NCBI RefSeq assembly: GCF_006345805.1
Contig: NW_021827310.1
Coordinates: forward strand, 1-10,971
Direction: 5' to 3'
Length of the DNA stretch: 10,971 nt
DNA from: Octopus sinensis
Taxonomy: Eukaryota
Part shown: piece after piece, positions 4,597 to 7,669 of the stretch
Layout of the letters: each line of letters begins with the position of its first letter
How positions within the stretch are numbered: position 1 is the stretch's first letter
Translations under genes and position numbers: made by a program
Notes under the pieces: generated by a model
What the model was told of the DNA's origin: nothing
What the model saw: only the letters and a program-made list of their open reading frames with translations
Databases searched by the model: none

Positions 4597-5109
4597 CTAG
4601 CAGTATCGCCCGGCGTTGCTCGGGTTTGTAAGGGAAATAACTATATAAGCATTTTTAGAGAGTTACTTCCCTTATAGATGCCAATTCTGGCTTTCTTAGC
4701 CATTTCTGTTTTGGTATCTTCAAGCCATGAAGTCGTTGTTCTAAAAGAACGCTGGTCTCCTTTACAACGCTTTACGACGTTGATTTCCTTAGACTCCCTT
4801 CCCCACAGCTTTACGAGGGAGGGAAGAAGGGGGAAGAAGCAAACAGGTGCAGGTGTGACCATGGACGCCAACTCCGCCGCCATCGACACACGAAAATTAT
4901 GCATTAAAATGGAATAAAAAATGATTTTAAATTATTTTTAAAATCGTAGACTCATCGTAGACGCGCGCTAATACTCAGACGGGCTTGATATGAATCACGA
5001 CTATAAGATACCTGAATTTGGTTAAACTGCACCGCAAAATGTTGGAGTAGTTAGGAATCTAAATCGAAGGGGACAGACACTCACACAACTACAGTTTTAT
5101 ATATATAGA
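4597..5109 (-). mobile_element. Complete non-autonomous Helitron (513 bp)
   Basis: The minus strand starts A|TCTATATATATAAAA (5109) and ends CTAG|T (4600-4597), giving an AT target site with no TSD. A GC-rich subterminal hairpin, cccgg-cgttgc-tcggg (4609-4624), lies 8 nt from the CTAG. Confidence 0.85.
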
Positions 5110-6232
5110 TATCAGATATCAAGTAGAAAAATTCTGATCTCGAATTTAGAACTCACTCATTCCATTTTATTTGTGTTAACATGTGAATCATAAATGACAT
5201 GTCATACCATAAGCAAGTTGAAACGAATTTGATTGACTGGGAACAGTCGACCGAATTGAACACAATATATTGGTTAATTTATTATTATTATTTATTTTAT
5301 CGATCCGAACGAAATAAAAAAGCAAATAGAATTCAGCGGAAGTTTATATGAGAATAGAAAAAGAGCCATTTGTCTTTAGTTTTATTAAATTTGTTTCCTA
5401 CCTACTTCTATTTGGAATTTAAATTAACACTGTGTAAATAAAATATTTTAAGCTAAGTCTATAAAACATTTACGACATTTAAGTAAATAATTTTCTAATT
5501 ATTCTATCATTTTTCTGTTTAAGAGTACCTATTATAGCTTTTAATTGGAAGAAATATAATTAAGAAAGAATGGAATTCCTAATACAGCTGAAAGATCTTG
5601 AGAACTGTGTGTGTCAGCAGGAAACTAAATTCTTAATATGTTACTTGACTCGTAACTTCCCGTCACTTATGACGAGTTCCTGCCGAGATAGTCTGGGAAG
5701 AGAAAGAGCTACATTTTCAGAAAACAACTCAAAGGGTTGGCTGTTTATATGGTGCTACAAGATTTGTATATTCTTTGTTGCAGAGACACAAGACATGGAA
5801 GTGTAACTTGTTCTCGTTGCCATTATTGATGCTGGTGTCCTTCTATCGTTATTATCTCAGGTGGCCATTCCCAGTTTTCTCTTTTTTCTCTTTTATTTAC
5901 AGTTGACACGATTTGACAGAGGTATATCAACAACTCGTAGTAGGTCTACTGACCGCTAAAAGTTCCCACATTAATCTTCCTCTGCTATTATTATTTCTTC
6001 GTGGTGATTAAATATACAACCAAAGTATTTCGACTTAGTAAAGATATAAGTTAAGGTTTCGAGCATATACCCTTTCTCAGAATAGAGCGGTATATTAGTG
6101 TAGTCCTAAATATATTTTTCCTAGAAAAAAATTATCAATAATTAATAATATCAGGGTAATAAAGATTTTAGAAATGTTTACTATATATGGCCAAGCGTGT
6201 AGAAAAATTAGTCAAGAGACTATATATTATTC

Positions 6233-6736
6233 ATATAAATACAGTGTACATTTAAACACATAAGAGGTATCCGTCATAGGATTCCTTTCACGCTAGAAGG
6301 AACAGCTAAAGTCCAAATCACTATTAGGGATACAAACTCGAAGAGAATGAAGAATAAAAACATTTACCATCTATCTCCTGGACCATTGTTTCAGACATTT
6401 TTTAGCAAATAAAGTAATTTGCTAGGCGAAGTCTTCCTCAGCAGGTACGCCTAGATTAAACATATAAGTACGAGGCAAATCCAGCATGTGCCTCTTGCTC
6501 ATACATTAGAATTTTCAAATCCACCGCGCAAGCGCAGTGTTTTGTGGACAGCATTCTTATTTGCTAAAAAAAGTCTGAAACCATGGTCTAGGAGATAGAT
6601 GGTAAATGTTTTTATTCTTCATTCCCTTCGAGTTTTTATCCCTAATAGTGGTTTGGACTTTAGCTGTTCTTTCTAGCGTGAAAGGAATTCTATGACGGAT
6701 AACTCTTATGTGTTTAAACGTACACTGTATTTATAT
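6233..6736. mobile_element. Fold-back element with 180-bp inverted arms, probably a Penelope-like element terminus derivative
   Basis: 6233-6412 matches the reverse complement of 6557-6736 at 170/180 with no gaps (manual alignment), around a 144-nt spacer. It contains the hammerhead. No target-site duplication seen. The family assignment is inference. Confidence 0.7.
6358..6465 (-). ncRNA. Type I hammerhead ribozyme, apparently intact
   Basis: Minus-strand RNA reads CCUG-CUGAGGA-AGAC-[UUCGCC UAGCAAAU UACUUU AUUUGCUA AAAAAU]-GUCU-GAAA-C-AAUG-GUC^CAGG. Stem I is CCUG/CAGG (6442-6445 with 6377-6380). The core is CUGANGA (6435-6441). Stem II is AGAC/GUCU. GAAA lies at 6389-6392. Stem III is AC/GU with a 4-nt loop, followed by the GUC triplet. 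Stem I extends through AUCUA/UAGAU and AUGUUUA/UAAAUGU. Folded by hand. Confidence 0.85.
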
Positions 6737-6857
6737 TTTTTCCTAAGTAGAAACAGGATGAGAAGCAAACATGTTCCATGGTTTGGGCTGCAAGTAATTT
6801 TTTCCTAGCTCTGCTGATTAGTAACATGACTCACAAGCATATAACAAGTAAATATGA

Positions 6858-7338: not shown

Positions 7339-7669
7339 GTGAGGGCGCGTGGCTTAGTGGTTAGGGCATTCGGCTCATGATCGTAAGGTTGTGAGTTCGA
7401 TTCCCGGCGACGCGTTGTGTCCTTGAGCAAGACACTTTATTTCACGTTGCTCCAGTCCACTCAGCTGGCAAAAATGAGTTGTACTTGTATTTCAAAGGGT
7501 CAGTCTTGTCACTCTCTGTGTCACGCTGATTATCCCCGAGAACTACGTTAAGGGTACACGTGTCTGTGGAATGCTCAGCCATTTGCACGTTAATTTCACG
7601 AGCAAGCTGTTCCGTTGATCGCATCAGCTGGGACGCTCGTCGTCGTAACCGGCGGAGTAAGAGTTAGAG
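7339..7669 (+). mobile_element. Full-length tRNA-derived SINE with a CORE/V-domain-like segment and a 10-bp TSD
   Basis: A box tggcttagtgg (7350-7360), B box gagttcgattcc (7393-7404), and ttgtgtccttgagcaagacactt (about 7415-7437). A short gagt-like tail is present. The direct repeat agtttaactc flanks it at 7329-7338 and 7670-7679. Confidence 0.88.

What the first reader, a model, noticed from the sequence alone, without database searches (positions are those of the whole stretch)
6358..6465. Intact extended type I hammerhead ribozyme with a hairpin-bearing stem II and a candidate loop-loop pseudoknot
Seen: every conserved core base is present (CUGAGGA, GAAA, GUC), with stems I-III paired and predicted cleavage on minus between 6381 and 6380. 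Stem I extends about 12 more bp beyond an internal loop GGCGUA/AGA. Stem II carries an inserted 8-bp hairpin (UAGCAAAU/AUUUGCUA). The stem I loop GGCG (6451->6448) is complementary to CGCC in the stem II internal loop (6428->6425). Established: stem I-stem II tertiary contacts, including pseudoknots, accelerate natural hammerheads, and hammerheads mark Penelope-like element termini. Inference: this is an active ribozyme and more elaborate than the usual minimal form. The same bases can instead form CUAGGCG/CGCCUAG (7 bp), which competes with the extended stem I and could act as a switch.
Basis: partly seen in the sequence, partly recalled or inferred. Interest (0 to 1): 0.85.

Follow-up and report, generated by a model that had tools for sequence, protein, structure and literature searches.

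The report
Hammerhead relic in a retroelement repeat
The hammerhead-ribozyme-shaped sequence is really there, but it is one decayed copy of a repeat with well over a thousand copies that behaves like a non-coding Penelope-type retroelement, and most of this copy's close relatives carry a broken ribozyme core, so it is an ordinary member of a known class, not a newly elaborate active ribozyme.

Summary
The motif exists exactly as described on the minus strand. It has CUGAGGA at 6441-6435, GAAA at 6392-6389, GUC at 6383-6381, and helices I, II and III. A descriptor scan finds it once in the window, against 1 hit in 3000 shuffles.

It is not a unique element. It lies inside a ~438-nt repeat unit (6553->6116) with more than 1,284 candidate copies in a 2.72-Gb eukaryotic genome. 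In the window the unit was inserted together with an inverted, 5'-truncated partial copy (6557-6736), and the pair is flanked by a 13-14-bp target duplication.

Across copies, the family shows partial head-to-tail tandems, head-to-head inverted pairs and microsatellite targets. These are hallmarks of Penelope-like elements and animal retrozymes, which are known hammerhead carriers.

About one third of copies (class A: CUGAAGA...GUCUGAAACCAUUGGUC) have a canonical core. The majority lineages carry U3, and usually A11.1 as well. The window copy sits inside the U3 clade, so its C3 is most simply a chance reversion. Its helix III is only 2 bp, and Rfam gives no hit.

The stem II hairpin shows one compensatory C-G to U-A change between subfamilies. 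The proposed GGCG/CGCC pseudoknot is compatible with the data but has no covariation support. Verdict: a new member of a known kind, and this copy is probably inactive.

The parts
6111..6123 (.). Left copy of the putative target-site duplication, TATAT(T)5CCTA
   Evidence: matches 6732-6745 apart from one T indel. It brackets the whole composite insertion.
6116..6553 (-). Full ~438-nt repeat unit that carries the hammerhead-like motif at unit positions 89-196
   Evidence: homology to more than 30 other loci at 85-94% identity ends at these limits, and there are more than 1,284 first-look candidates genome-wide.
6557..6736 (+). Inverted, 5'-truncated partial copy (unit positions 142-321). It holds only the 3' half of the motif (GUCUGAAACCAUGGUCUAGG)
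   Evidence: 180-nt arms, 94% complementary to 6233-6412..
6732..6745 (.). Right copy of the putative target-site duplication
6358..6465 (-).
6435..6441 (-). Core box CUGAGGA (C3-A9). The consensus of the closest copies is UUGAUGA
6431..6434 (-). Helix II proximal 5' strand AGAC (A10.1). It pairs with 6393-6396
   Evidence: these pairs are 86-99% paired across copies, except 10.1-11.1, which is paired in only 46 of 70.
6425..6428 (-). CGCC, the 5' side of the helix II internal loop and one proposed pseudoknot partner
   Evidence: helix 3 in that table.
6403..6424 (-). 8-bp hairpin UAGCAAAU-UACUUU-AUUUGCUA capping helix II
   Evidence: present in the MFE fold. C-G to U-A compensatory change between subfamilies.
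6393..6396 (-). Helix II proximal 3' strand GUCU (U11.1 at 6393)
   Evidence: Most U3-lineage copies read GUCA here.
6389..6392 (-). Core box GAAA (G12, A13, A14, A15.1)
6381..6388 (-). Helix III remnant and cleavage triplet: C15.2, loop AAUG, G16.2, U16.1, C17. The predicted cut lies between 6381 and 6380
   Evidence: The consensus is CCAUGG (class B) or CCAUUGG (class A); the window copy has C to A.
6442..6445 (-). Helix I proximal 5' strand CCUG. It pairs with CAGG at 6377-6380
   Evidence: 95% paired.
6377..6380 (-). Helix I proximal 3' strand CAGG
6448..6451 (-). GGCG in the helix I internal loop, the other proposed pseudoknot partner. It reads GGUG in class A
6452..6460 (-). Helix I distal 5' strand UUUAAUCUA
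   Evidence: 91-95% paired.
6363..6373 (-). Helix I distal 3' strand UAGAU-GG-UAAA

Best explanation
**What it is.** The motif is the hammerhead module of one fossil copy of a non-coding, ~440-470-nt interspersed retroelement. The element is mobilised in the manner of Penelope-like elements (PLEs), so it resembles a non-autonomous PLE derivative or 'non-LTR retrozyme'.

**Likely mechanism (inferred).** The ancestral element, retained in class A copies, carried a genuine type I hammerhead: CUGAAGA, a 6-bp helix II extended by an internal loop and an 8-bp hairpin, GAAA, a 3-bp helix III, and GUC. In head-to-tail transcripts it would cut after GUC. Such elements are copied into staggered breaks, here mostly in microsatellites. 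That produces partial tandems and an inverted 5'-truncated copy upstream.

**What is shown.** The most numerous lineages (classes B, C and D) went on multiplying after the core changed to U3, and mostly to A11.1 as well. So amplification of those lineages did not depend on a canonical core. Loss of self-cleavage in them is expected from that core, not shown. Selection still kept the stem II hairpin.

**The window copy.** It belongs to such a U3 lineage. It regained C3 by a single T to C change and lost a helix III pair. Most likely it is a non-functional relic that merely looks intact.
For: **Repeat family**
- More than 1,284 first-look candidates, and 42 scored matches at 88-100% identity.
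- Homology limits at 6116-6553, plus the inverted arm at 6557-6736.
- Putative target duplication.

**PLE-type architecture**
- Among 74 composite insertions, partial tandems, head-to-head inverted 5'-truncated plus direct copies, and microsatellite flanks ((TA)n, (CA)n, (TATG)n) are each frequent.
- These features match the descriptions in PMC8557442 and PMC4209133.
- EN+ PLEs are abundant in this genome: at least 147 GIY-YIG matches over the cut-off, many with open frames of 600-880 aa.

**Canonical class A and non-canonical majority**
- The 19-mer pattern search gave 314 genome hits. Of the first 100: 33 CTGAAGA, 36 TTGATGA, 22 TTGACGA, 5 TTGAAGA, 2 TTGAGGA, 1 CTGACGA, 1 CTGATGA.
- Core state, position 11.1 and helix III are linked: 26 copies are CTGAAGA/GUCU/CCAUUGG and 31 are TTGATGA/GUCA/CCAUGG.
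- Within-class divergence is similar, about 6%.

**Window copy inside the U3 clade**
- With the core masked, it is sister to L008 (TTGAGGA). C3 is scattered across the tree outside class A.

**Hairpin selection**
- Pair 4 of the hairpin reads C-G 48, U-A 10, U.G 7, C.A 2.

**Chance level**
- One descriptor hit in 3000 shuffles of the window.

**Literature**
- Metazoan type I hammerheads live in 150-450-bp low-GC repeats and in PLE pLTRs, often with a tiny palindromic helix III (PMC7229834; PMC4209133; preprint 10.64898/2026.07.22.740005).
Against: - No Rfam hammerhead hit for the window copy at E<=10, nor for two class A copies in tandem (L049). The long insert in helix II may defeat the filters.
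- 10.1-11.1 is A-U, not the near-universal G-C.
- No sequence link to an autonomous PLE was found. The two PLE families whose flanks I checked share nothing with the unit.
- No long tandem arrays were seen, only dimers.
- Copy ends do not pile up at the predicted cleavage site.
- Cleavage activity of any class is untested.
- The U3.G8 wobble could retain some activity.
Confidence: 0.72

Rival explanations
1. The window copy is an active, extended type I hammerhead. Its helix I and helix II internal loops dock through a 4-bp GGCG/CGCC pseudoknot, possibly switched by the competing 7-bp CUAGGCG/CGCCUAG helix.
For: - All core positions and all three helices are present in this copy.
- GGYG and CGCC are retained in every subfamily consensus, while the opposite loop strands vary (AGU/AGA/AAA, and poly-A of variable length).
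- Pairing is kept in 92.5% of cells.
- Class A has GGUG, which still pairs by G.U.
Against: - The copy descends from a U3 lineage, and C3 is sporadic there (2 of 62).
- Helix III is reduced to 2 bp, helix II has a U.U mismatch, and 10.1-11.1 is A-U.
- The hammerhead fold is 8 kcal/mol above the MFE.
- There is no Rfam hit.
- The pseudoknot shows no change on both sides, and shuffles do as well as the observed structure.
- In class A an extra A breaks the 7-bp alternative helix, and in class C it has a U.U mismatch. A conserved switch is therefore unlikely.
Confidence: 0.12
2. The conserved structure is not a ribozyme at all. It is an RNA recognition or stability module for the retrotransposition machinery (long helix II hairpin, long helix I), and its hammerhead likeness in class A is incidental.
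For: - The most successful lineages lack C3 and U11.1 yet keep the hairpin, with a compensatory change.
- Rfam models do not score any copy tested.
- Copy termini are unrelated to the cleavage site.
Against: - A full canonical core with correctly placed helices is expected only about 3e-4 times per 11 kb by chance.
- It sits in exactly the kind of element in which hammerheads are known to reside.
- The genome holds other bona fide hammerheads (RF00163, up to 48 bits).
Confidence: 0.1
3. The U3/A11.1 lineages are a new, still catalytic core variant (U3.G8 wobble with an A.A mismatch closing helix II). It would work as a dimer through the palindromic ACCAUGGU helix III that arose in those same lineages.
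For: - U3, A11.1 and the palindromic CCAUGG are tightly linked and were amplified together.
- Natural core covariation U3-A8 and dimeric action through palindromic helix III are documented in PLE hammerheads.
- A mismatch at the base of helix II exists in an axolotl retrozyme hammerhead.
Against: - G8 is unchanged, so this is not the documented U3-A8 covariation.
- From general knowledge of hammerhead mutagenesis (not checked here), C3 substitutions strongly reduce cleavage.
- There is no experimental or comparative support.
Confidence: 0.06

Closest known systems
Hammerhead motifs in the pseudo-LTRs of Penelope-like elements (Cervera & de la Pena 2014, PMC4209133)
   Same: - Type I topology.
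[quoted passage not shown]
- A tiny, palindromic helix III (CCAUGG in class B).
- Occurrence as single, tandem or closely spaced opposite-strand copies.
- High within-genome heterogeneity, including core variants.
- Host elements with partial tandems, inverted 5'-truncated copies and microsatellite targets.
   Different: - There is no unpaired nucleotide between A9 and a G10.1-C11.1 pair; here 10.1-11.1 is A-U (A.A in most U3 copies).
- Helix II is interrupted by a CGCC/poly-A internal loop and capped by an 8-bp hairpin, making the motif ~108 nt against ~45.
- No RT/EN ORF lies between repeats.
- No sequence link to a PLE was found.
Metazoan non-LTR retrozymes (Cervera & de la Pena 2020, PMC7229834; Li et al. 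2026 preprint 10.64898/2026.07.22.740005)
   Same: - Non-coding, low-GC (~33%) repeat of a few hundred bp (period ~465-470) with one type I hammerhead per unit.
- Thousands of copies.
- Co-occurrence with abundant PLEs.
   Different: - Retrozymes are described as tandem arrays from dimers to large multimers, expressed as circRNAs. Here I saw only monomers, about 1.3-2.5-unit partial tandems and inverted pairs.
- Expression and circularity could not be tested.
- Two thirds of copies lack a canonical core.
Amphibian satellite 2 / axolotl HHR_Amex hammerheads
   Same: A weak helix III with a palindromic loop implies action as dimers. One variant has a mismatch at the base of helix II.
   Different: Those keep the conserved loop 1-loop 2 tertiary nucleotides and C3. 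The present family has neither the archetypal loops nor, in most copies, C3.
Pseudoknot-stabilised hammerheads (described for many bacterial/phage and other genomic hammerheads; recalled from Perreault et al. 2011, not re-read here)
   Same: Watson-Crick pairing between elements of helix I and helix II as the tertiary contact. This is what the GGCG/CGCC complementarity would amount to.
   Different: There the pairing is supported by covariation and usually involves terminal loops. Here it would join two internal loops, and it has no covariation support.

Membership tests
Hammerhead ribozyme, type I | Conserved core nucleotides C3 U4 G5 A6 N7 G8 A9 / G12 A13 A14 / A15.1-U16.1 / H17 | tested here: met
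   The window copy has CUGAGGA, GAAA and GUC. Caveat: the consensus of its own lineage has U3, and mostly A11.1. Only class A (~1/3 of copies) is canonical at the source-sequence level.
Hammerhead ribozyme, type I | Three helices around the core, with helix I open-ended | tested here: met
   Helix I is 4 bp (+9 distal), helix II is 4-6 bp plus the hairpin, and helix III is 2 bp in the window (3 bp in class A).
Hammerhead ribozyme, type I | G10.1-C11.1 closing pair of helix II (highly conserved in natural hammerheads; PMC4209133) | tested here: not met
   A10.1-U11.1 in the window and in class A; A.A in most U3 copies (paired in 46 of 70).
Hammerhead ribozyme, type I | Score at or above the Rfam gathering threshold for a hammerhead covariance model (RF00163 and its clan) | tested here: not met
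   No hit at gathering score over the window, none at E<=10 in 6250-6600, and none for two class A copies in L049. Other loci of the same genome reach 34-48 bits. The 34-nt insert in helix II may be lost to the filters.
Hammerhead ribozyme, type I | Helix I-helix II tertiary contact supported by conservation or covariation | tested here: inconclusive
   GGYG/CGCC is complementary in all subfamily consensuses. The only variation is a one-sided C to U (G.U), with no change on both sides, and shuffles reach the observed values.
Hammerhead ribozyme, type I | Site-specific self-cleavage giving 2',3'-cyclic phosphate and 5'-OH ends | not testable with these tools
   This needs in vitro transcription and cleavage assays. 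Genomic copy ends show no pile-up at unit position 173/174.
Penelope-like element derivative / non-LTR retrozyme | Partial head-to-tail tandems (pseudo-LTR-like) and an inverted 5'-truncated copy adjacent upstream | tested here: met
   In the window, the inverted arm 6557-6736 lies next to the unit 6553-6116. Both arrangements are frequent among 74 composite insertions. Described for PLEs in PMC8557442.
Penelope-like element derivative / non-LTR retrozyme | Insertion bias for microsatellites | tested here: met
   Most copy 3' ends abut (TA)n, (CA)n, (TATG)n or (TAGA)n. The window copy itself sits in an A/T-rich site with a 13-14-bp duplication.
Penelope-like element derivative / non-LTR retrozyme | Sequence similarity to the pLTR or 3' end of an autonomous PLE in the same genome | tested here: not met
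   No BLAST similarity to the 3' region of a 781-aa-ORF PLE family (L083), nor to the pLTR and flanks of a very young PLE family (L084-L087). Only two of several PLE families were examined.
Penelope-like element derivative / non-LTR retrozyme | Multimeric tandem arrays expressed as linear and circular monomer RNAs | tested here: inconclusive
   Same-strand pairs spaced ~470 nt exist (for example C3:60716199 and 60716668, and C2:142117090 and 142117560). No arrays longer than about 2.5 units were seen in 74 composites. RNA data are not available.

The most novel reading that the evidence does not exclude
Class A of this family would be a natural, extended metazoan type I hammerhead whose tertiary contact is a 4-bp Watson-Crick pseudoknot (GGYG/CGCC) between internal loops of helix I and helix II, with an extra 8-bp hairpin stacked on helix II. 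In addition, the U3/A11.1 lineages would have kept amplifying either with a new active core variant or after complete loss of catalysis. The latter would be a clean natural experiment showing that hammerhead cleavage is dispensable for mobilisation of PLE-type elements.
Probability: 0.15. Interest if true: 0.55.

Novelty: new member of a known kind. Interest (0 to 1): 0.3.

Why it matters
Hammerheads in animal retroelements are well documented, so the finding mainly adds one more family, with an unusually long, hairpin-bearing helix II.

The useful point is evolutionary. Within one genome, a canonical-core lineage (about one third of copies) coexists with more numerous lineages that lost C3 and U11.1, yet kept multiplying and kept the helix II hairpin through a compensatory change.

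This bears on the open question of what hammerheads do for Penelope-like elements and retrozymes. It suggests that RNA structure matters for spread, and that catalysis may not.

It is also a caution for motif scans: a copy that looks 'intact' can be a reversion inside a degenerate lineage.

Tried and rejected
- **Rfam.** A whole-window scan at gathering score, and permissive scans of 6250-6600 and of a class A tandem, gave no hammerhead hit. The 104-108-nt RF00163 hits elsewhere in the genome turned out to be a different family with a 63-nt insert (L058).
- **Two wasted pattern searches.** I set the helix II gap to 40-60 nt when the real gap is about 34 nt. The search was redone correctly.
- **Covariation.** Counting over 70 copies gave nothing above the shuffles, as expected for neutrally decaying repeat copies.
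- **Looking for the autonomous partner.**
  - A PLE ORF next to a family copy in L033 looked promising. It has the DKG motif and YIDD, and a weak RVT_1 match at E=0.034.
  - Both elements simply sit in the same (CA)n tract, and that PLE family's pLTR and flanks share no sequence with the unit.
  - The 3' region of a second PLE family (L083) shares nothing either.
- **tRNA or SINE head.** ARAGORN found no tRNA-like sequence in the window.
- **Bacterial or organellar origin.** Rejected: the genome is 2.72 Gb in 13,516 contigs with about 30 chromosome-sized scaffolds, and the window has no long ORFs.
- **Organism.** I could not identify it. Size and scaffold number recall an octopus assembly, but that is memory only, and the one paper I read did not confirm it.

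Full report
**1. The observation**

Reading the minus strand confirms the motif.
- Helix I proximal is CCUG (6445-6442) with CAGG (6380-6377).
- The core box is CUGAGGA (6441-6435).
- Helix II is AGAC (6434-6431) with GUCU (6396-6393). It encloses UUCGCC, the 8-bp hairpin UAGCAAAU/AUUUGCUA (6424-6417 with 6410-6403) and an A-rich strand.
- GAAA is at 6392-6389.
- Helix III is A-U and C-G with an AAUG loop.
- GUC is at 6383-6381, so cleavage would fall between 6381 and 6380.
- Beyond the GGCGUA/AGA internal loop, helix I continues for 9 bp (AUCUA/UAGAU, a GG bulge, then UUUA/UAAA), not about 12.
- GGCG (6451-6448) and CGCC (6428-6425) are complementary, as is the 7-mer CUAGGCG/CGCCUAG.

I wrote a hammerhead descriptor: CUGANGA, helix II of at least 4 bp, GAAA, helix III of at least 2 bp, UH, and helix I of at least 4 bp. 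It finds this one site in the window on either strand. It found one site in 3000 dinucleotide-preserving shuffles. That is about 3e-4 per 11-kb window, but it still means on the order of 80 chance motifs in a 2.7-Gb genome. A single occurrence therefore proves little.

Several things count against a strong ribozyme.
- No Rfam family matches, at gathering score over the window or at E<=10 in 6250-6600.
- The MFE fold is not the hammerhead: -21.9 against -14.0 kcal/mol for the hammerhead pairing.
- The fold is no more stable than shuffles (z = -1.0).

**2. It is a repeat copy**

The window is contig C3781 of a 2.72-Gb genome with 13,516 contigs. The window is about 33% GC and has no long ORFs or tRNAs.

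The 141 nt around the motif match 42 scored places at 88-100% identity, out of 1,284 first-look candidates. Comparison with 30 flanked loci puts the limits of homology at window 6116-6553, a 438-nt unit read on the minus strand. A second, inverted piece lies at 6557-6736. That piece is a 180-nt arm, 94% complementary to 6233-6412. It corresponds to unit positions 142-321 and so holds only the 3' half of the motif.

The composite is bracketed by TATAT(T)5-6CCTA at 6111-6123 and 6732-6745, a likely target-site duplication. The inverted partial copy and the full unit therefore arrived in a single insertion event.

**3. What kind of element**

I looked at 74 composite insertions in 80 loci. The copies occur in three forms:
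- monomers;
- partial head-to-tail tandems, for example unit 276-438 followed by 2-416, with period ~465-470 (same-strand pairs 469-470 nt apart);
- head-to-head pairs, in which an inverted 5'-truncated copy precedes a direct copy.

Their outward-pointing 3' ends overwhelmingly abut microsatellites: (TA)n, (CA)n, (TATG)n, (TAGA)n.

The literature gives the same three features for Penelope-like elements. They are partial tandems forming pseudo-LTRs, an inverted 5'-truncated copy next to the upstream pLTR, and a strong microsatellite insertion bias. Hammerheads sit in the pLTRs, and non-autonomous derivatives make multicopy head-to-tail insertions (PMC8557442; PMC4209133).

Animal type I hammerheads are also known from 150-450-bp, low-GC tandem repeats, the non-LTR retrozymes (PMC7229834). 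A 2026 preprint argues these are non-autonomous PLE derivatives.

The genome is rich in endonuclease-bearing PLEs. There are at least 147 GIY-YIG matches over the Pfam cut-off, many in 600-880-aa open frames. There is also a very young family with 97-99% identical copies and ORFs up to 1008 aa.

I could not tie the unit to a particular PLE by sequence. The 3' region of one family (L083) and the pLTR and flanks of the young family (L084-L087) share nothing with it. The one adjacency I found, in L033, is two elements sharing a (CA)n tract. The PLE-type mobilisation is therefore inferred from architecture, not from homology.

**4. The decisive point: subfamilies**

The consensus of the 36 copies closest to the window reads UUGAUGA, not CUGAUGA, and its helix III is the palindrome CCAUGG.

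An unbiased genome-wide pattern (TACCTGYTGANGAAGACTT) gave 314 hits. Of the first 100:

| Core box | Count |
|---|---|
| CTGAAGA | 33 |
| TTGATGA | 36 |
| TTGACGA | 22 |
| TTGAAGA | 5 |
| TTGAGGA | 2 |
| CTGACGA | 1 |
| CTGATGA | 1 |

A longer pattern spanning the whole core gave 139 hits and shows tight linkage between features.
- **Class A** = CTGAAGA + GUCU-GAAA + CCAUUGG. This is a fully canonical core with a 3-bp helix III.
- **Classes B, C and D** = U3, mostly with GUCA-GAAA (A11.1, so A.A closes helix II) and CCAUGG.

Within-class divergence is similar, about 6%. The lineages are therefore of comparable age, and the non-canonical ones are the more numerous.

I built a tree of 53 near-full units with the core heptamer masked. 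Class A is a separate clade. The window copy is sister to L008 (TTGAGGA, which shares its G7 and its CAAUGG helix III) inside the U3 clade. C3 turns up here and there among U3 relatives.

In the unbiased list, C3 occurs in 2 of 62 copies whose N7 is U, C or G. That is what a random T to C change would give. The window's 'complete' core is thus most simply a reversion in a dead copy. That copy has also lost a helix III pair and a helix II pair.

**5. Structure under selection**

Counting pairs over 70 copies (alignment A1) gives 92% paired cells, but no covariation beyond shuffles. This is expected, because copies decay neutrally after insertion.

Differences between subfamilies are more telling. 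In the helix II hairpin, the fourth pair reads C-G in 48 copies, U-A in 10, U.G in 7 and C.A in 2. The Fisher test gives p = 4e-6, not corrected for relatedness. The U-A copies form one related group of subfamilies, so this probably reflects a single event. In that group an A-U pair also became G.U.

The hairpin was therefore kept as RNA structure in lineages that had already lost C3.

For the proposed pseudoknot, every subfamily consensus keeps CGCC and GGYG. The only difference is GGCG against GGUG in class A. That is a one-sided, wobble-compatible change at a CpG. It neither supports nor refutes the pairing.

The competing 7-bp helix is perfect only in class B. Class A has an extra A and class C has a U.U mismatch. 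A conserved switch is therefore unlikely.

In the consensus, helix II is really 6 bp (AGACUU/AAGUCU). It continues into an internal loop (CGCC opposite A4-6) and the 8-bp hairpin.

**6. Mechanism**

What is shown:
- the motif itself;
- repeat membership;
- the insertion architecture;
- the subfamily states;
- the hairpin compensation.

What is inferred:
- The ancestral element, as in class A, carried a working type I hammerhead that would cut head-to-tail transcripts after GUC.
- The element is copied by a PLE-type reverse transcriptase/GIY-YIG endonuclease into staggered breaks in microsatellites.
- Catalysis became dispensable, because the U3/A11.1 lineages spread at least as well. This echoes the remark in PMC8557442 that PLEs without hammerheads proliferate freely.
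- The window copy is a relic.

The absence of copy ends at unit position 173/174 shows that integrated copies derive from uncut or religated RNA.

**7. Comparison and novelty**

The closest known systems are the PLE pLTR hammerheads and the metazoan non-LTR retrozymes.

It resembles them in several ways:
- type I topology;
- a short helix I and a long helix II;
- a tiny palindromic helix III;
- a low-GC unit of a few hundred bp;
- PLE-style insertions.

It differs in several ways:
- an A-U (or A.A) pair at 10.1-11.1, not G-C;
- an interrupted helix II with a hairpin on top (~108 nt overall);
- no long arrays seen;
- no Rfam score;
- no sequence link to an autonomous PLE.

I file it as a new member of a known kind. 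The window copy itself is most likely inactive. Interest is modest. The worthwhile angle is the coexistence of canonical and core-mutant lineages, with structure but not catalytic sequence conserved.

Noticed in passing
window 6233-6412 and 6557-6736: The direct unit and the inverted partial copy form a 180-bp, 94% complementary inverted repeat with a 144-nt spacer. If transcribed through, it would give a long hairpin dsRNA, a possible small-RNA source.
   Followed up: no
window 7938-8268: Compound trinucleotide microsatellite: (ATA)n grading into (GGT/GAT)n, (GAT)n, (GAC-GAT)n and back to (ATA)n. It accounts for the GC-skew peak at 8001-9000 and for the artefactual ORFs there.
   Followed up: no
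window ~7339-7634 and ~4899-5110: Two further interspersed repeats unrelated to the hammerhead unit. L001 2500-2795 matches the flanks of L018, L023 and L030 at 76-90% identity, and L001 60-271 matches L023 757-962 at 87%.
   Followed up: no
G000, e.g. L051 1501-1545, L052 1501-1547, L056 1501-1546 and 1932-1977: The genome holds compact hammerheads that do pass Rfam RF00163 (34-48 bits; 8 of 74 scored candidates). They include a same-strand pair 431 nt apart on C16, which looks like a retrozyme-type tandem.
   Followed up: partly
L058 1501-1608 (minus strand): A different hammerhead-like family with a 63-nt insertion in the helix II loop and a core reading CUGAUGUG (A9 replaced by U). It scores exactly at the RF00163 threshold (34 bits), and several other 103-109-nt hits resemble it.
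   Followed up: partly
L084 1020-1395 and L085 2598-2976 (G000:C19:26.80 Mb): A very young Penelope-like family: copies 97-99% identical at protein level, open frames up to 1008 aa, and ~380-nt pseudo-LTRs 98.7% identical. It is inserted next to (CA)n. Its pLTR holds a min-hammerhead-like box CCGACGA-A-GAGC-UCC-GCUC-GAAAC-GUC with C where U4 should be. No Rfam hit.
   Followed up: partly
L033 1150-1900: An inverted-plus-direct pair of the hammerhead repeat and a Penelope-like ORF (with DKG and YIDD motifs) occupy the same (CA)n microsatellite in the same orientation, without any sequence relationship between them. This suggests shared target preference.
   Followed up: yes
L083 ~200-640: The 3' untranslated region of another abundant PLE family (781-aa ORFs) contains about five degenerate ~90-nt repeats, each with GATTGGTCA...TGATGACGTC. 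That box resembles a CRE/ATF-type site. The element ends in (TA)n.
   Followed up: no
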